DNA of 64,000 nucleotides from positions 248,001 to 312,000 of IMG/VR virus record IMGVR_UViG_3300043418_000072; one strand, given 5' to 3'. The notes under the pieces were generated by a model. It was not told where the DNA came from. It did no database searches and saw nothing but the letters and a program-made list of their open reading frames with translations. Every line of letters begins with the position of its first letter. Positions within the stretch are counted from its first letter, which is position 1. The translations under genes and the position numbers were made by a program. Positions 7,352 through 51,404 of the stretch are shown here, piece after piece.

Positions 7352-8049
7352 AGTCCCGCTGCTTCCATAATCGATTTAACCCACGTTACGTCTTCTGGGT
7401 AATCTCTAAACTTCTTCTGCCAGTAATCGGGGTCAATGGCAGGCAAAATTATTTCCACTTGTTCATTAGATAACGTATCAAGAAAGGCAACCCCGCTCTC
7501 ACAATTAAAGACAACCCAAGGACTAATACGACCGGTGCTAATATGATGACAGATCCTATTACCATTAGCGTATCTGAAATAGTCTCTATAGCCGTTTTTA
7601 AGTTCTGGATGATCCTCTGCATAACTTGTTATTTCCTTTAATGCCCGCTCTAGTGCGTCTTGCGGGTTCTCTTTTTTCATGTACTCTGCCAACCACTCTG
7701 CATAAAACGCATCCTTGGTCCAGTAGTCTAACTTCTTATTGTTTTTAAGCAACCAGTCAATGAATACCAGTGGGTTAACTGCACGTATACCCACTAGGTG
7801 TCTACCAAACTTAACAAATGCTGTGTAGTATGGGCTACCAGCAAAGTCTTCGTATGTTTTGATCTTGCCTGCACCTTGTGTTGTTTGATAAAATCGCAGG
7901 TATGCTTTAAAGCCTAACTGTACGCCAGTTTCGTTTTGTTGCTGTGCTCTGCGCTTTTGTTCGCAGGCGTGACTTGCTAGAGTAGATTCCTTAGCAAATG
8001 ATTTGCCACAATACTGACATTTATAGGTCTGCTTTGATTCGCTTGTCAT
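7348..8049 (-). CDS. C2H2-like Zn-finger protein
   Basis: YKCQYCGKSFAKESTLASHAC; start moved to MTSESK. Confidence 0.7.
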   Translation of the reverse strand: MTSESKQTYKCQYCGKSFAKESTLASHACEQKRRAQQQNETGVQLGFKAYLRFYQTTQGAGKIKTYEDFAGSPYYTAFVKFGRHLVGIRAVNPLVFIDWLLKNNKKLDYWTKDAFYAEWLAEYMKKENPQDALERALKEITSYAEDHPELKNGYRDYFRYANGNRICHHISTGRISPWVVFNCESGVAFLDTLSNEQVEIILPAIDPDYWQKKFRDYPEDVTWVKSIMEAAGL

Positions 8050-31664: not shown

Positions 31665-32120
31665 TTATTCTTCAATTTGTGTAACTGTTATGCCCGAACT
31701 CCTTAGGAATTGGACTCCTGCATCATCGCGATAGTTTGCACCATAAAATACACGACGAATGCCTGACTGAAAAATGAGCTTGGCACAGTGGATACAAGGA
31801 CTGTGAGTAACAAATAAGTCAGCCCCGTTGCCAACGTTAGGAGACTTCGCCAGTTTTGCAATAGCGTTTGATTCAGCATGTAATACCTCAGGTCGTGTTA
31901 CTAATCTAGTTGTATCTTCTTCAATGGCATAGGTTTGTTTGTTAACAACCTTGGGATGTTCTTCACAGTTGTTATCCCATCCCGCCGGCATGCCATTGTA
32001 TCCGTAAATAACCACATCGTCTTTGACAATAACTGCCCCTACCTTGAGCCTACGTGCATGACTTAGTTCAGCTGCACGATGTGCCCAGTCCATATATAGT
32101 TGTTGATATTTTGTTTTCAT
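31665..32120 (-). CDS. dCMP deaminase
   Basis: GYNG, HAESNAI, PCIHC. Confidence 0.9.
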   Translation of the reverse strand: MKTKYQQLYMDWAHRAAELSHARRLKVGAVIVKDDVVIYGYNGMPAGWDNNCEEHPKVVNKQTYAIEEDTTRLVTRPEVLHAESNAIAKLAKSPNVGNGADLFVTHSPCIHCAKLIFQSGIRRVFYGANYRDDAGVQFLRSSGITVTQIEE

Positions 32121-32155
32121 AAATGGCAAACCCCGCACAAGGCGGGGTAATGTTA

Positions 32156-33002: not shown

Positions 33003-33239
33003 GTAACGTATGGCAAGTCAATTGCGGGACAATGTGCAATGTACATTAGATAGAGTCGATTTTCAAGGCAACCTTTTTCTAAAGCAAAATACAACAAGCA
33101 GAGGATACCAATATTGCCGAGCATCAATAAACAAGCAACTTAATGCCATTTCATCTCGGAGCACTGGATCACGATTGTATATTCCAGTAAGCGTTTCAAG
33201 TGCTAACTAGATGTGCAATCTCTCATCTCCACACGCTAC
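33003..33239 (-). ncRNA. Putative ~237-nt structured RNA upstream of the DIP1984-like gene
   Basis: Ends form an 11-bp helix GUAGCGUGUGG/CCAUACGUUAC with two G-U pairs; U-rich interior. Confidence 0.5.
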
Positions 33240-33265
33240 AGCTAGTTTTGAGAAACTAGCAAAAA

Positions 33266-33341
33266 TGGAGGACGGTGTAGGAGTTTAACCTACCTTATAC
33301 CGAGTTTGCAATCCGGCGCATAAACGCTCTGCCAACCGTCC
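33266..33341 (-). tRNA. tRNA-Cys(GCA)
   Basis: U73, CCA, atypical T-loop TTAAACT. Confidence 0.8.
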
Positions 33342-33347
33342 ATAAAT

Positions 33348-33434
33348 CTTATATGTAAACACACTAACACGGCTACCACACCTTACGATGCCCTGTGACC
33401 GCACTCCAGGTTAGATAATGTGTTTGCATATAAG
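33348..33434 (-). ncRNA. Stem-closed small RNA (TATATG..ACACA terminal duplex)
   Basis: ~16-bp terminal inverted repeat, nearly identical to that at 51285-51367. Confidence 0.45.
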
Positions 33435-34336
33435 TGGAGGACTGAGAATACATCTCTCCCAACAACACCTCGGACATTATTACGATCCTTGCGAGACCGC
33501 TTTCTTCCGACTTCCACTAAACCCTACTTGCATAGTAGTCTAGTCTGCTGTCAGCATCGCCGTTTTTAAAGACAGGCAGTAGTCTTGTCGCCATATGCTA
33601 TTCTACGCTTTCTATCCCGTTGACCTTTAGAGCCATTCACCACCGCTAAGTAGCTACGAAACTTCCTGCATAAACAGATTTCACCTTGCGAGTTACGTCT
33701 GACTTAGTTAGCTTGCGCCCTAAGTATTAGATGCTTTTCACATATGACCGAGTCAGTCTTTGCGTTTTGTAATGATAGCGGGAATTGAACCCGCCGCATT
33801 CTGTTTAAGAGACAGACGTTCTACCAATGAACTATATCAACCTACTGCGATGTGCTGACTCAGTTGCTGCATACTCTTTTGGAATACACAATACAACACA
33901 CCACGTACCTTTTGCCTTGCGAGCTACTCAGTCGTCTTTTGCGACCAATGTTCGTATTACTACGTCCACCAACCACTAAAACTGCATACGAGCTCTTAGG
34001 TGCAACCCTTCGAACCAATACACTACCCTTTCTCATACCAATTAACAAAGTTGGTTTCGCATAGAAGTCAGCACCACCTGTTACTTTCCATCTACTCAAG
34101 TTCCCCTTGATGCAATCTCAGGCTTGTAAGCAAACGTTCTTCCCTATGCACTTTGCGTCACTGTTACAACCACCCGTCGCTGAGTGATCGCTCCCTCACA
34201 GGAGTGAGCAGGCTTGTCTAAACGAACTATTGCTAGCGGAGTTATGTAGGCATACCTCCTTTGGCTGTGTCACCACAGTTATTCTTCGCATCAAGCTGGG
34301 CGAACCATACTCTTTGCAGGACATTAAACTGCCCCA
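33435..34336 (-). ncRNA. Probable GOLLD large ncRNA with embedded tRNA
   Basis: ~900 nt without a credible ORF inside a phage tRNA island; several GCAA-capped hairpins; 3' TGTATTCTCAG end recalled from GOLLD; internal tRNA. Confidence 0.7.
33770..33841 (-). tRNA. tRNA-Lys(CTT) embedded in GOLLD, no CCA
   Basis: Normal D, anticodon and T arms; weak acceptor terminus; no encoded CCA. Confidence 0.7.
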
Positions 34337-34338
34337 AA

Positions 34339-34451
34339 TTCTTATACAACTGCACACTCACAGGATTCGAACCTGCGACCCGGGCAATAGCCCGAGCTAT
34401 GATCCAACCATATCAGCGTGGCCTACGCCTTTATGTGCATGTGTATAAGAA
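34339..34451 (-). ncRNA. tRNA mimic on long stem (anticodon loop replaced by tetraloop)
   Basis: D arm TATG/CATA, CGGGC-TATT-GCCCG, T arm GCAGG-TTCGAAT-CCTGT, terminal stem TTCTTATAC/GTATAAGAA. Confidence 0.55.
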
Positions 34452-34468
34452 CTTCTTATACGTATCTA

Positions 34469-34479
34469 TTTTAAAGAAC
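34469..34479 (-). promoter_or_regulatory. boxA-like antitermination element
   Basis: GTTCTTTAAAA about 30 nt downstream of the promoter. Confidence 0.55.
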
Positions 34480-34512
34480 TTGCTTGTTAGCACTATCACT
34501 AACTAAGCTGCT

Positions 34513-34541
34513 ATTGTAGCAAACTTTTCATTTGCTGTCAA
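34513..34541 (-). promoter_or_regulatory. sigma70 promoter for the GOLLD unit
   Basis: TTGACA-17-TACAAT. Confidence 0.75.
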
Positions 34542-34554
34542 CAGTTATTTAGAA

Positions 34555-34840
34555 ATTTATTTTGATGCCTCTTTCGCCTGCTTACAAGGCTACGGGTAAG
34601 ACTTGCGTCTTTTGGTTGACCCTCATGCAACCAGCGGAGCGTTACTCTACTTTATTGCAATCCTTCTTCCTGCGTATTGCTACGTGGAATAGATCGTTTC
34701 TAACTCATAGGTGTTAGACGCCACTGTAGTCTCTTACAAACTACACAAGAGTGCCCAGCTTTCTTTCTGGACCAAATTTTCAACAAGACTCACGCAACCT
34801 AATAGCGTGGTAGGCCTGTTTACTTTACATCAAAACAAAT
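34555..34840 (-). ncRNA. Unidentified ~285-nt structured RNA
   Basis: Closing stem TTTGATG/CATCAAA, two GCAA tetraloop hairpins, own promoter and boxA, no ORF. Confidence 0.55.
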
Positions 34841-34851
34841 TTTTAAAGAAC
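34841..34851 (-). promoter_or_regulatory. boxA-like element
   Basis: GTTCTTTAAAA, same as 34469-34479. Confidence 0.55.
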
Positions 34852-34877
34852 GTTTGTTAATTGCTTAACATGTATCT

Positions 34878-34906
34878 ATTATAACAAGAGTTTCATTAAG
34901 TGTCAA
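34878..34906 (-). promoter_or_regulatory. Consensus sigma70 promoter
   Basis: TTGACA-17-TATAAT. Confidence 0.8.
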
Positions 34907-34935
34907 GTACTTTTAGAAAAACTTAAAATAATAAA

Positions 34936-35019
34936 TGGTGCGTAAGGAGAGACTCGAACTCTCAATCCTCGCGGCGCTGGCTTCTAAGACCAGAGTGTAT
35001 ACCATTCCACCACTTACGC
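34936..35019 (-). tRNA. tRNA-Leu(TAG), long variable arm
   Basis: Cloverleaf with CCA. Confidence 0.9.
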
Positions 35020-35030
35020 ATTGTGATAAA

Positions 35031-36206
35031 TTACTTATCATCTAAGCTGTTATTATAAACAAATTTGACTTGCTTGTCAACTATGTGTTTATCCATAATA
35101 GCTTCAAAATCTTTTGGGTCTTGTGCTTTTGGGGCACAGTAACCGCATATACATCTTGTTCTAGCACATTGTATAACAGGCATGGCTTTGTTGTCAATGT
35201 TTTTCTGCACTTGTTCTAGTATAAGATTACCATTTGACAAATTACCAATTGGACCAACTGTGCCGTTAAAGCGCATACGGCAATCCTTGTTTGTGTACAC
35301 ATCGCCATTGATCTGTTTAATGTACAAGAAGTACCAATTAACACTACAACTCCATCCCATGAAATCTGCATGTGGCACAAAGGCTGTTGGGTGTTGTAAG
35401 TCTTGGTTAGTGCATAGCTTTCGACCACCACAACAACCACGACCTACCTTACCCATGCCAACTGTGTCTGTTGACACTGCATCTAATGCCTTTGTTAGCG
35501 CATCTCTACTCTTAGCAGGGGTACGCGACTTGTAGTAATCTTGAAAGTAAATAAACTGTTCTTTGTTATATTGCCACTGTGGTGTAGGAGTGTCGTTTGC
35601 TTTAACTACATAGTCAACACTGTGTGTCTTGCAAAACTCGATAGCTTGTTGGCTAATATCCCACAAAACAGGATCGTTGTGCATCACAAACACCACCTTT
35701 TGGCGCCTGCCGATGGCCTTATTATAAAGTATGTTGTCTAGTACTTGCTGTCTCTGTTTAGGCAATGCACTGCTGTGAAAACTAACTGTAAACTCATCAA
35801 TTAAGTTTGCAACCTTTTCCCAAAGATTCTTGCCAGCCACTGCATTACTTGTGCATGTAACAGTTAATGGCCATTCGTATGTGTGTCTTGCACGAACCTG
35901 TTCAAGGATCTCAACAATGTCTGGATGAAAGATGCTTTCGCCGCCGTAGACATTAAGAACAACCATGCGCTGCCATTTAGGCTTTAGCTGCATGTACTTG
36001 TCTGCATAAGCAAACATGAAGTCAATGGTCTTTAAGCATTCGTCTTTAGGAGGATGCGCTGTGCTATTGTCGTGGCCACCATACTCAATGCCAGTTGAGC
36101 AGTAGTCGCAATCCAAATTGCACTTCATTGTCAATTCCCAGTCCAACAAAAATGTGGGACGGTTAACTGGATCGATTGCAGGCTCAATTGAGATAATTTT
36201 ATTCAT
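35031..36206 (-). CDS. Radical SAM enzyme with Cys-rich C-terminal domain
   Basis: CNLDCDYC, GGE, C-terminal CARTRCICGYC. Confidence 0.9.
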   Translation of the reverse strand: MNKIISIEPAIDPVNRPTFLLDWELTMKCNLDCDYCSTGIEYGGHDNSTAHPPKDECLKTIDFMFAYADKYMQLKPKWQRMVVLNVYGGESIFHPDIVEILEQVRARHTYEWPLTVTCTSNAVAGKNLWEKVANLIDEFTVSFHSSALPKQRQQVLDNILYNKAIGRRQKVVFVMHNDPVLWDISQQAIEFCKTHSVDYVVKANDTPTPQWQYNKEQFIYFQDYYKSRTPAKSRDALTKALDAVSTDTVGMGKVGRGCCGGRKLCTNQDLQHPTAFVPHADFMGWSCSVNWYFLYIKQINGDVYTNKDCRMRFNGTVGPIGNLSNGNLILEQVQKNIDNKAMPVIQCARTRCICGYCAPKAQDPKDFEAIMDKHIVDKQVKFVYNNSLDDK

Positions 36207-50576: not shown

Positions 50577-50756
50577 TGCTGTTAAGGCTGATATCTAATA
50601 AACCCTACTAGGAATCGAACCTAGGCCCCCGACGGATTATGCCGGTGTGCGTCCACTACACTATAGAGACTCCCTCCTCTTTCGCTCGGCAAAGCTACAC
50701 GAATTGAGGTTAGATTTCAGACTGCTTTCAGATTGCCGTCATCAGCCTTAACAACA
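50577..50756 (-). ncRNA. tRNA-like domain on long closing stem (Y-RNA-like architecture)
   Basis: ~16-bp terminal duplex TGTTAAGGCTGAT; D arm, CTAGG-TTCGATT-CCTAG; no CCA. Confidence 0.55.
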
Positions 50757-51283: not shown

Positions 51284-51284
51284 A

Positions 51285-51367
51285 CTATATGTAAACACAA
51301 TACTCATCCGCTTTACGCTAATATCACTTTAGGCGATTTGATTGTTCGGCATTGTGTTTGCATATAG
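51285..51367 (-). ncRNA. Stem-closed small RNA
   Basis: Terminal duplex matches 33348-33434. Confidence 0.45.
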
Positions 51368-51404
51368 AGCCCTGTAACTTGTACAGGGATATATGACAGT
51401 ATCT

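What the first reader, a model, noticed from the sequence alone, without database searches (positions are those of the whole stretch)
33435..34336. Probable GOLLD RNA carrying an internal tRNA-Lys(CUU)
Seen: ~900 nt non-coding region with repeated GCAA tetraloops, a complete tRNA lacking CCA at 33770-33841, and a dedicated promoter plus boxA. Established: GOLLD RNAs occur in phage tRNA clusters, can embed tRNAs in a variable region and form large oligomeric cages; their function is unknown. The assignment rests on recalled 3' motifs.
Basis: partly seen in the sequence, partly recalled or inferred. Interest (0 to 1): 0.6.

Follow-up and report, generated by a model that had tools for sequence, protein, structure and literature searches.

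The report
Phage GOLLD RNA with built-in tRNA
This is a genuine GOLLD RNA, a roughly 920-nt cage-forming non-coding RNA, encoded in the tRNA array of a 354-kb jumbo phage; it carries a tRNA-shaped insert that looks more like a permanent part of the RNA than an ordinary tRNA gene.

Summary
Confirmed. The Rfam GOLLD model matches window 33439-33904 on the minus strand over its full length (196.1 bits, cut-off 150, E 9e-54). A tRNA-Lys(CUU) at 33769-33841 sits in the model's variable linker.

The upstream 430 nt (33905-34334) is the 5' domain. It is homologous in about 50 related phage loci, and 71 of its 94 predicted pairs show compensatory changes.

GOLLD RNAs in phage tRNA arrays with a tRNA in the linker are already described, so this is a new member of a known kind.

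Added here:
- The nested tRNA lacks CCA, while 45 of the window's 48 tRNAs encode it.
- The top of its acceptor stem is mispaired, because its 5' strand is an invariant GOLLD motif.
- Its fold covaries across relatives, but its anticodon changes (Lys, Asn, Thr, Arg, Ile).
- One relative has a circularly permuted version and two have lost it.

These features favour a tethered tRNA-shaped domain inside the cage over a normal excised tRNA. The claimed boxA is not supported, and the claimed dedicated promoter is only partly supported. Expression could not be tested.

The parts
33417..34334 (-). Whole GOLLD RNA (about 918 nt) as delimited by conservation
   Evidence: Near-identity block in window/L098/L131/L140 with divergent flanks. 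Homologous over both halves in about 50 loci.
33905..34334 (-). 5' domain (430 nt), not covered by the Rfam model
   Evidence: 33-sequence alignment A2. RNAalifold gives 94 pairs, 71 with compensatory changes. Its length is close to the 420-nt 5' region of the solved env-38 GOLLD (PMC12286853).
33439..33904 (-). Conserved 3' domain, matched by Rfam GOLLD RF02032
   Evidence: 196.1 bits, gathering score 150, E 8.9e-54, model 1-416 of 416, not truncated.
33839..33845 (-). Invariant GUAGGUU motif at the 5' edge of the linker; its last three bases form tRNA positions 1-3
   Evidence: Invariant or nearly so in 37 unique full-length relatives. GUAGG is complementary to the invariant CCUAC loop of a 5'-domain hairpin, with matched changes in Magneto and Phosso. 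This pairing is a lead only.
33769..33841 (-). Nested tRNA-shaped module, Lys(CUU), anticodon at 33807-33809. No CCA; acceptor pairs are G1.U72 and a U2/U71 mismatch, then 5 Watson-Crick pairs.
   Evidence: Cloverleaf covariation in relatives: 15 of 18 pairs, with only 4 acceptor pairs conserved.
33754..33768 (-). Invariant AAAACGCAAAGACUG at the 3' edge of the linker (J13/15)
   Evidence: Invariant in all relatives. Used as the search pattern.
33740..33749 (-). J13/15 strand of the 9-bp pairing with loop L20
   Evidence: Rfam pseudoknot columns. 9 of 10 positions stay paired in 21 distinct variants, with many compensatory changes. The solved GOLLD cage uses this pairing as an intermolecular bridge (PMC12286853).
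33589..33598 (-). L20 strand of the same pairing
34338..34346 (-). -10-like TATAAGAAT just before the conserved 5' start; possible own promoter or processing signal
   Evidence: Not called by the consensus promoter scan.
34513..34541 (-). Consensus sigma-70-type promoter (TTGACA, 17 nt, TACAAT, preceded by TG) that would transcribe the tRNA-like element and then GOLLD
   Evidence: identical in L098.
34352..34439 (-). 88-nt tRNA-like element with a long variable arm, directly upstream of GOLLD. No CCA, weak acceptor stem.
   Evidence: ARAGORN calls it Pro(UGG); Rfam tRNA is below threshold. It keeps this position in L098, L123, L110 and L047, with a covarying variable arm.
33348..33434 (-). Long hairpin at the GOLLD 3' end: 15-nt inverted-repeat arms around a variable loop, followed by tRNA-Cys (33266-33341). 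Candidate 3' processing or termination element.
   Evidence: Phosso and Magneto have ordinary intrinsic terminators at this position instead.

Best explanation
The locus encodes a GOLLD RNA of a jumbo phage, on the minus strand, about 918 nt long. It has a 430-nt structured 5' domain, the conserved 3' domain, and between them a linker occupied by a tRNA-shaped module.

By analogy with the solved GOLLD structures, the RNA most likely assembles by itself into a closed 12- to 14-mer nanocage. The 5' domains would cap each half-shell and the 3' domains would form the ring. The linker, and so one tRNA-shaped module per chain, would point into the interior.

The nested module is most likely not an ordinary tRNA gene that is cut out to decode AAG. 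More probably it stays covalently attached as an L-shaped tRNA mimic with an intact elbow and anticodon loop but a degenerate acceptor end. What it binds or does inside the cage is unknown.

Shown here: family identity, extent, conserved structure of both domains and of the module, and conservation of the bridge pairing. Inferred: cage formation, interior location and non-excision.
For: Identity. The Rfam GOLLD hit is full length and well above cut-off. There is one copy in a 354-kb virus record that CheckV rates 100% complete, inside a 48-tRNA array.

5' domain. It is homologous in about 50 loci, and 71 of 94 pairs covary.

Cage. The J13/15-L20 pairing is an intermolecular bridge in the solved 14-mer (PMC12286853). 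It is kept here through many compensatory changes. Domain sizes (430 nt plus about 488 nt) match env-38 (420 plus 413 nt). The tRNA sits where env-38 has its disordered interior linker.

Module not a normal tRNA:
- 45 of the window's 48 tRNAs encode N-CCA; the nested one does not. The genome shows no CCA-adding enzyme.
- 29 of 31 unique nested tRNAs have acceptor mismatches, mostly at pairs 2-71 and 3-70, because the 5' strand is the invariant GUAGGUU. Only 4 acceptor pairs are conserved.
- D, anticodon and T stems covary and the elbow bases are invariant, so the fold is under selection.
- Anticodons differ within well-supported clades of near-identical tRNA bodies. 'Asn' versions carry A73, not the G73 of the window's own tRNA-Asn.
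- One relative has a circularly permuted version and two have none.
- The window already has a separate tRNA-Lys(CUU) and two tRNA-Lys(UUU), all with CCA.

Precedent. In Mycobacterium aubagnense the tRNA inside GOLLD is a predicted pseudo-tRNA, and no separate tRNA was seen on Northern blots (PMC6582537).
Against: The window's own copy is one of the better tRNAs of the set: 64 bits, a single mismatch plus a G.U pair in the acceptor stem, and an A73 suitable for Lys. RNase P and RNase Z cleavage followed by host CCA addition therefore cannot be excluded.

Covariation cannot tell an intramolecular from an intermolecular pairing. I did not test homology of the 5' domain to the canonical P1-P13 of solved GOLLDs, because no reference sequence was available to the tools.
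Confidence: 0.6

Rival explanations
1. Stored pro-tRNA. The nested element is a real tRNA-Lys(CUU) precursor. GOLLD holds it inside the cage, protected from processing ('inhibited storage'). On opening or turnover, RNase P and RNase Z release it, the host CCA-adding enzyme completes it, and it decodes AAG late in infection.
For: Good tRNA scores (64.1 bits; ARAGORN Lys CUU). Canonical D and T loops and an A73. The fold covaries in relatives. Anticodon changes could be real identity switches, since the anticodon is the main identity element for Lys, Asn, Thr, Ile and Arg (established knowledge). The idea is raised in PMC12990946 and PMC12286853. Some distant members have a fuller acceptor stem, and one has CCA-like letters.
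Against: It lacks CCA in a genome where 45 of 48 tRNAs encode it, and no phage CCA enzyme was found. Positions 1-3 are fixed by a GOLLD motif and mispaired in 29 of 31 relatives. 'Asn' versions lack G73. It is redundant with three free tRNA-Lys genes. Permuted and tRNA-less relatives exist. No free tRNA was detected in the one case examined experimentally (PMC6582537).
Confidence: 0.25
2. Multivalent decoy. The cage carries 12-14 tethered tRNA mimics that bind, and may be cut by, host tRNA-targeting defence nucleases or other tRNA-binding factors, sparing the translating tRNA pool.
For: In the main clade the anticodon loop reads C-U-N-N-U-A-A in 26 of 31 unique modules. The commonest identities are Lys(UUU/CUU), Asn(GUU) and Thr(UGU). 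That is the set cleaved by the PARIS effector AriB in E. coli (PMC12409363), and Lys is the PrrC target. The elbow and anticodon arm are conserved while the acceptor end, which translation needs, is not. Phage tRNAs are known counter-defences (PMC11464382, PMC12409363).
Against: The anticodon set is also what single-base steps from an ancestral UUU would give. More distant members carry Gly(ACC), Gly(GCC) and Thr(AGU) or Phe (PMC12990946). Only one module has the UAAUCA cleavage context (inspection output). An interior location would hinder access by a nuclease. The host and its defences are unknown, and no tRNA-repair genes were found.
Confidence: 0.1
3. Inert passenger. The linker tolerates insertions and the tRNA is a decaying relic copied in from the surrounding array, with no role of its own.
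For: The linker varies in length and content; two relatives have 50 nt with no tRNA. tRNA sequence identity (52-74%) is lower than backbone identity (84-87%). ARAGORN fails to call a tRNA in 8 relatives' linkers; two of these are the tRNA-less ones and one holds the permuted version.
Against: 15 of 18 cloverleaf pairs keep pairing through compensatory changes, and the elbow nucleotides are invariant across about 30 diverged copies. A neutral relic would not show this. The position is identical from Caulobacter and Sinorhizobium phages to the metagenomic clade.
Confidence: 0.05

Closest known systems
GOLLD RNA env-38 (833 nt, D7 14-mer nanocage, PDB 9MEE; PMC12286853)
   Same: Same Rfam family. 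Same two-domain layout: about 420-430 nt 5' cap domain plus conserved 3' ring domain. The variable linker lies about 60-75 nt into the 3' region. The J13/15-L20 pairing is conserved. Phage origin, next to tRNA genes.
   Different: env-38 has a 42-nt disordered linker without a tRNA; here the linker is a 73-nt tRNA-shaped module between two invariant motifs. Sequence homology of the 5' domains was not tested. The stoichiometry here is unknown.
Mycobacterial and Mycolicibacterium GOLLD in tRNA arrays, with a tRNA-Phe or pseudo-tRNA in J13/15 (PMC6582537, PMC12990946)
   Same: GOLLD inside a large, horizontally acquired tRNA cluster, with a tRNA-like element at the same junction. That element was judged a pseudo-tRNA and was not detected as a separate RNA.
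   Different: Different host phylum and a different tRNA identity. Here the comparison across about 50 loci shows the module is structurally conserved while its anticodon changes.
GOLLD of Sinorhizobium phage Phosso and of phiCbK-like Caulobacter phages (Magneto, Karma, Swift)
   Same: Closest cultured-phage relatives: 66-70% DNA identity over the 3' part, and both score above the Rfam cut-off (186.6 and 169.4 bits). The nested tRNA is at the same spot. In Magneto tRNA-Cys follows GOLLD, as in the window.
   Different: Those copies end in ordinary intrinsic terminators; the window has a long inverted-repeat hairpin instead. Records annotate the Caulobacter-phage element simply as tRNA-Lys and leave GOLLD unannotated.
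ROOL RNA (RF03087)
   Same: Large phage or prophage RNA near tRNA islands that forms a nanocage with an interior linker.
   Different: Unrelated sequence and fold. There is no ROOL match in the window or the genome (the genome control search was uninformative).
Tethered tRNA-like structures (tmRNA tRNA-like domain, plant-virus 3' TLS)
   Same: A tRNA-shaped fold built into a larger RNA and used as a handle rather than as a decoder. A circularly permuted version exists in one relative, as in permuted tmRNAs.
   Different: Those mimics keep a chargeable acceptor and CCA end and often lack a true anticodon arm. Here the acceptor end is the degenerate part, and the anticodon arm and elbow are kept.

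Membership tests
GOLLD RNA (Rfam RF02032) | Covariance-model score at or above the curated gathering score over the conserved 3' domain | tested here: met
   196.1 bits against 150, E 8.9e-54, model 1-416 of 416, no truncation.
GOLLD RNA (Rfam RF02032) | Long-range J13/15-L20 pairing (pseudoknot in the model; an intermolecular bridge in the solved cage) | tested here: met
   Window 33740-33749 pairs with 33589-33598 at 9 of 10 positions. The pairing is kept through compensatory changes in 21 distinct variants.
GOLLD RNA (Rfam RF02032) | Large, less conserved, structured 5' domain (P1-P13, about 400 nt) joined to the 3' domain | tested here: inconclusive
   A 430-nt contiguous domain with 94 predicted pairs, 71 covarying, is present and conserved in the subfamily. 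Helix-by-helix equivalence to the published P1-P13 could not be checked, because no reference sequence was available to the tools.
GOLLD RNA (Rfam RF02032) | Variable linker after the first 3'-domain hairpin, sometimes holding a tRNA | tested here: met
   The tRNA at 33769-33841 aligns to the insert region of the model, between the invariant GUAGGUU and AAAACGCAAAGACUG motifs.
GOLLD RNA (Rfam RF02032) | Phage or prophage location next to tRNA genes | tested here: met
   354-kb virus record; 48 tRNAs in the window; a helicase about 50% identical to those of jumbo phages Phosso, Atu_ph07 and PA5oct.
GOLLD RNA (Rfam RF02032) | Self-assembly into a closed homo-oligomeric nanocage | not testable with these tools
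   Needs native gel, mass photometry or cryo-EM of the transcript.
GOLLD RNA (Rfam RF02032) | Expression as a discrete RNA during phage growth | not tested
Functional (decoding) tRNA-Lys | Cloverleaf with canonical D-loop and T-loop elbow nucleotides and a 7-nt anticodon loop | tested here: met
   Rfam tRNA 64.1 bits; ARAGORN structure; loop CUCUUAA.
Functional (decoding) tRNA-Lys | Fully paired 7-bp acceptor stem | tested here: not met
   Window: G1.U72 wobble and a U2/U71 mismatch. 29 of 31 unique relatives have at least one mismatch, and only 4 acceptor pairs are conserved. Among all 48 tRNAs called in the window, 37 have no acceptor mismatch; the nested one is among the 10 with one.
Functional (decoding) tRNA-Lys | 3' CCA, encoded as in the genome's other tRNAs | tested here: not met
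   45 of 48 window tRNAs have N-CCA; the nested one reads A-CAAAACG. No PF01743 enzyme was found in the genome.
Functional (decoding) tRNA-Lys | Anticodon and identity conserved among orthologues | tested here: not met
   Orthologous modules carry CUU, UUU, GUU, AUU, UGU, UCU, GAU, UAU and UUC, also within well-supported clades of near-identical bodies. More distant members carry ACC, GCC and AGU.
Functional (decoding) tRNA-Lys | Release as a tRNA-sized, aminoacylated molecule | not testable with these tools
   Needs Northern blotting or tRNA sequencing of infected cells.

The most novel reading that the evidence does not exclude
The module nested in this GOLLD subfamily is a permanently tethered, non-decoding tRNA mimic. 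Its elbow and its C-U-N-N-U-A-A anticodon loop are the selected features. A GOLLD cage would then be a multivalent display or trap of 12-14 tRNA look-alikes, acting on a tRNA-recognising factor such as a host anticodon nuclease of the PARIS or PrrC kind. That would give GOLLD its first function, as a phage counter-defence RNA.
Probability: 0.1. Interest if true: 0.85.

Novelty: new member of a known kind. Interest (0 to 1): 0.4.

Why it matters
GOLLD is one of the largest bacterial or phage non-coding RNAs. Its architecture is solved but it has no known function.

This locus adds a clean, complete example in a jumbo phage. It also gives access to a family of about 50 related copies in which the linker tRNA can be compared.

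That comparison turns 'a tRNA is sometimes embedded' into a testable statement. The embedded element keeps the tRNA shape and anticodon loop, but it has lost the features needed for charging and it changes anticodon freely. This points experiments at what binds the tethered tRNA shape, rather than at tRNA supply. If that is wrong and the tRNA is released, GOLLD would be a regulated tRNA store. Either result would narrow the open question of GOLLD function.

Tried and rejected
- boxA: the consensus gives no site within 3 mismatches near the locus, and window-wide matches are at chance.
- ROOL and other Rfam families: nothing but GOLLD and tRNAs reaches threshold in the window. ROOL is absent from the genome, but that control search rang nowhere, so it is uninformative.
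I tried no other route.
- 15-mer scan: the first scan of viral contigs returned mostly chance hits. I screened them with an nhmmer profile and repeated the scan with a 19-base pattern.
- Bacterial genomes: three of six pattern hits were chance; no GOLLD in the Oscillospiraceae, Kiritimatiellae or Faecalicatena loci.
- Phage-encoded CCA-adding enzyme, RtcB and T4 Rnl1: none found. The Rnl1 control rang nowhere, so that blank is uninformative.
- PARIS link: the apparent match between nested anticodons and PARIS targets weakened once distant members with Gly and Thr(AGU) were seen. I kept it only as a low-probability rival.
- tRNA tree: too few columns to show a single origin of all nested tRNAs; only the starred sub-clades are used.
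- Own sigma-70 promoter at 34336-34350: not called by the scan.
- Small ORFs overlapping the locus (50-79 aa): disregarded in view of the covariance-model hit and the RNA covariation.

Full report
OBSERVATION. The region is non-coding and lies on the minus strand. A scan of the whole window against Rfam gives one GOLLD (RF02032) match at 33439-33904 (-). It covers model positions 1-416 of 416 without truncation, at 196.1 bits against a gathering score of 150 and E 8.9e-54. All other matches are tRNAs. A sensitive E-value scan of 33200-35100 adds nothing credible. ARAGORN finds 48 tRNA genes in the window, all on the minus strand, including tRNA-Lys(CUU) at 33769-33841. In the model alignment this tRNA occupies the insert-tolerant linker after the first hairpin of the 3' domain. 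The window is bases 248001-312000 of a 354,098-bp virus record that CheckV rates complete, and this is its only GOLLD. A helicase in the window is about 50% identical to those of the jumbo phages Phosso, Atu_ph07 and PA5oct. CGCAAG tetraloop hairpins occur four times on the minus strand of the region, where about 0.3 would be expected.

EXTENT AND 5' HALF. The Rfam model covers only the conserved 3' half. BLAST against cultured phages found the same element in Sinorhizobium phage Phosso and in phiCbK-like Caulobacter phages. Both pass the GOLLD cut-off, at 186.6 and 169.4 bits, with a tRNA at the same place. A conserved 15-mer just 3' of the tRNA, and then a 19-base version of it, retrieved IMG/VR loci. 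An nhmmer profile screen left 53 homologous loci, 37 of them unique and full length, that align over both the 5' and the 3' half. In the four closest copies (window, L098, L131, L140) identity is nearly complete from GGGCAG... at 34334 to ...ACACAUU at 33417, and it breaks down on both sides. An alignment of 33 5' domains (A2) gives an RNAalifold consensus of 94 pairs, 71 of which keep pairing through changes on both sides. The 430-nt 5' half is therefore a conserved structured domain. Its size matches the 420-nt 5' region of the solved env-38 GOLLD (PMC12286853). I could not compare it helix by helix with the published P1-P13.

CAGE-RELATED FEATURE. In env-38 the pairing between J13/15 and loop L20, first seen by covariation, is an intermolecular bridge of the 14-mer, and the linker lies inside the cage (PMC12286853). 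Here the two strands are 33740-33749 and 33589-33598. They pair at 9 of 10 positions. Across 21 distinct variants in the subfamily the same nine positions stay paired through many compensatory changes. This supports, but does not prove, the same assembly.

THE NESTED tRNA. It is a good cloverleaf: 64.1 bits, canonical D and T loops, loop CUCUUAA. It differs from the phage's ordinary tRNAs in several ways.

(i) CCA. 45 of the window's 48 tRNAs encode N-CCA. The exceptions are the nested one, an odd 88-nt element just upstream of GOLLD, and a weak tRNA-Ile(AAU). No CCA-adding enzyme domain is found in the genome.

(ii) Acceptor stem. The first three bases belong to an invariant GOLLD motif, GUAGGUU. 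The window copy has G1.U72 and a U2/U71 mismatch. Of 31 unique nested tRNAs in relatives, 29 have acceptor mismatches, mostly at pairs 2-71 and 3-70. A consensus fold of the linker keeps only four acceptor pairs, while 15 of 18 pairs overall covary and the elbow nucleotides are invariant.

(iii) Anticodon. The anticodon is not conserved: Lys UUU and CUU, Asn GUU and AUU, Thr UGU, Arg UCU, Ile GAU and UAU, and Glu UUC all occur. The loop reads C-U-N-N-U-A-A in 26 of 31. Well-supported clades of near-identical tRNA bodies mix anticodons, and the window's nested tRNA does not group with its three free tRNA-Lys genes. The tRNA part is more diverged (52-74% identity) than the backbone (84-87%). 'Asn' versions have A73, whereas the window's free tRNA-Asn has G73.

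(iv) Plasticity. One relative (L085) has what folds as a circularly permuted tRNA in the linker, and two (L100, L127) have a 50-nt linker with no tRNA. More distant members, in MAG contigs labelled Hyphomicrobiales and Pyrinomonadaceae, carry Gly(ACC), Gly(GCC) and Thr(AGU).

Literature. tRNAs in the GOLLD linker are known (PMC12286853, PMC12990946). In Mycobacterium aubagnense the nested element was called a pseudo-tRNA, and no separate tRNA was detected on Northern blots (PMC6582537).

TRANSCRIPTION SIGNALS. The consensus scan finds sigma-70-type promoters on the minus strand at 35052-35080, 34878-34906 and 34513-34541, but none directly before GOLLD, and no intrinsic terminator after it. 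The 34513-34541 promoter is conserved in L098. It would transcribe the 88-nt tRNA-like element (34352-34439) and then GOLLD. A -10-like TATAAGAAT lies at 34338-34346, just before the conserved start. Related forms stand at the same distance in L131 and L140. The motif is kept in L098, L123 and L110, and L047 has a consensus TTGACA-17-TACAAT promoter inserted exactly there. An own promoter is therefore plausible, and the conserved start is probably close to the true 5' end, but neither is shown. The boxA claim fails. At the 3' end, 15-nt inverted repeats (33420-33434 and 33348-33362) enclose a loop that differs completely among close relatives, and tRNA-Cys follows. Phosso and Magneto have ordinary terminators at this position.

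INTERPRETATION. Identity as GOLLD is near certain. The most likely mechanism is self-assembly into a 12- to 14-mer nanocage with one tRNA-shaped module per chain inside. This rests on analogy with solved structures plus the conserved bridge pairing.

For the module, the evidence favours a tethered structural or functional tRNA mimic over a routinely excised decoder. The fold is selected, the charging end is not, and the anticodon drifts.

Three rivals remain. A stored pro-tRNA, released and completed by host enzymes, is possible, and the window copy is among the most tRNA-like. A decoy for tRNA-targeting defence nucleases is suggested by the predominance of Lys, Asn and Thr anticodons, which are the PARIS AriB target set (PMC12409363). 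That idea is weakened by the simpler mutational-neighbour explanation and by the distant members. A neutral relic is contradicted by the covariation.

NOVELTY. This is a new member of a known family, showing a known feature. The comparative findings on the nested module may be new in detail, but I could not check all the literature.

LIMITS. The host is unknown.

Noticed in passing
window 34352-34439 (-): An 88-nt tRNA-like element with a long variable arm. ARAGORN calls it Pro(UGG); Rfam tRNA is below threshold; it has no CCA and a weak acceptor stem. It sits directly upstream of GOLLD and keeps that position in L098, L123, L110 and L047. Its variable arm covaries, but its anticodon region is not conserved.
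   Followed up: partly
window 34545-34872 (-): Candidate structured RNA of about 330 nt between two consensus sigma-70 promoters (34878-34906 and 34513-34541). Folding energy z-score is -4.3, with no shuffle as stable. It is conserved in L098, L131 and L140. There is no Rfam match and no ORF of 50 aa or more on that strand.
   Followed up: partly
window 33348-33362 (-) with 33420-33434 (+); also 51284-51298 (-) with 51354-51368 (+): Two pairs of 15-nt inverted repeats (GTGTTTRCATATAAG), each enclosing about 55-57 nt and each ending just upstream of a tRNA (Cys, Glu). In close relatives the arms are conserved and the enclosed sequence is entirely different. They may be processing or termination hairpins, or sites of a small mobile insert.
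   Followed up: partly
window 34443-34461; also 33344-33353 and 34337-34346 (-): A perfect 19-nt palindrome (GTATAAGAA-N-TTCTTATAC) upstream of the tRNA-like element. The motif TATAAGAWKT occurs three times within 1.2 kb, where 0.7 is expected in the whole window, each time just before an RNA gene. It may be a phage-specific promoter or operator.
   Followed up: partly
L085:7545-8068 (linker about 7640-7745): The GOLLD linker of this relative folds as a circularly permuted tRNA. The order is T arm, 3' acceptor strand with CCA, closing loop, 5' acceptor strand, D arm, then anticodon arm (GAU).
   Followed up: partly
window 33841-33845 (-) and the hairpin loop CCUAC in the 5' domain (A2 columns 90-94): The invariant GUAGG at the 5' edge of the nested tRNA is complementary to an invariant 5-nt hairpin loop of the 5' domain. 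Magneto has GUGGG with CCCAU and Phosso has AUGGG with CCCAG, a matched change. This may be a subfamily-specific tertiary or intermolecular contact that occupies tRNA position 1.
   Followed up: partly
window 32156-54664 (-): 48 tRNA genes lie on one strand and 45 carry an encoded CCA. The genome shows no CCA-adding enzyme, RtcB or T4-type RNA ligase domain. tRNA-Ile(AAU) at 50599-50671 is a weak, CCA-less outlier.
   Followed up: partly
L002:698-1017 (Caulobacter phage Magneto): A permuted tmRNA (Rfam 70.3 bits) lies next to the Magneto GOLLD on the opposite strand. The record annotates neither it nor GOLLD; the record lists only tRNA-Lys there.
   Followed up: no
window 31665-32138 (-) and 35031-36206 (-): A cytidine/deoxycytidylate deaminase-family protein (157 aa, 82 bits) and a weak radical-SAM-like protein (391 aa, below cut-off) flank the tRNA/GOLLD block. 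Whether the deaminase acts on nucleotides or on tRNA A34 is unknown; a tRNA-Arg(ACG) is present.
   Followed up: no
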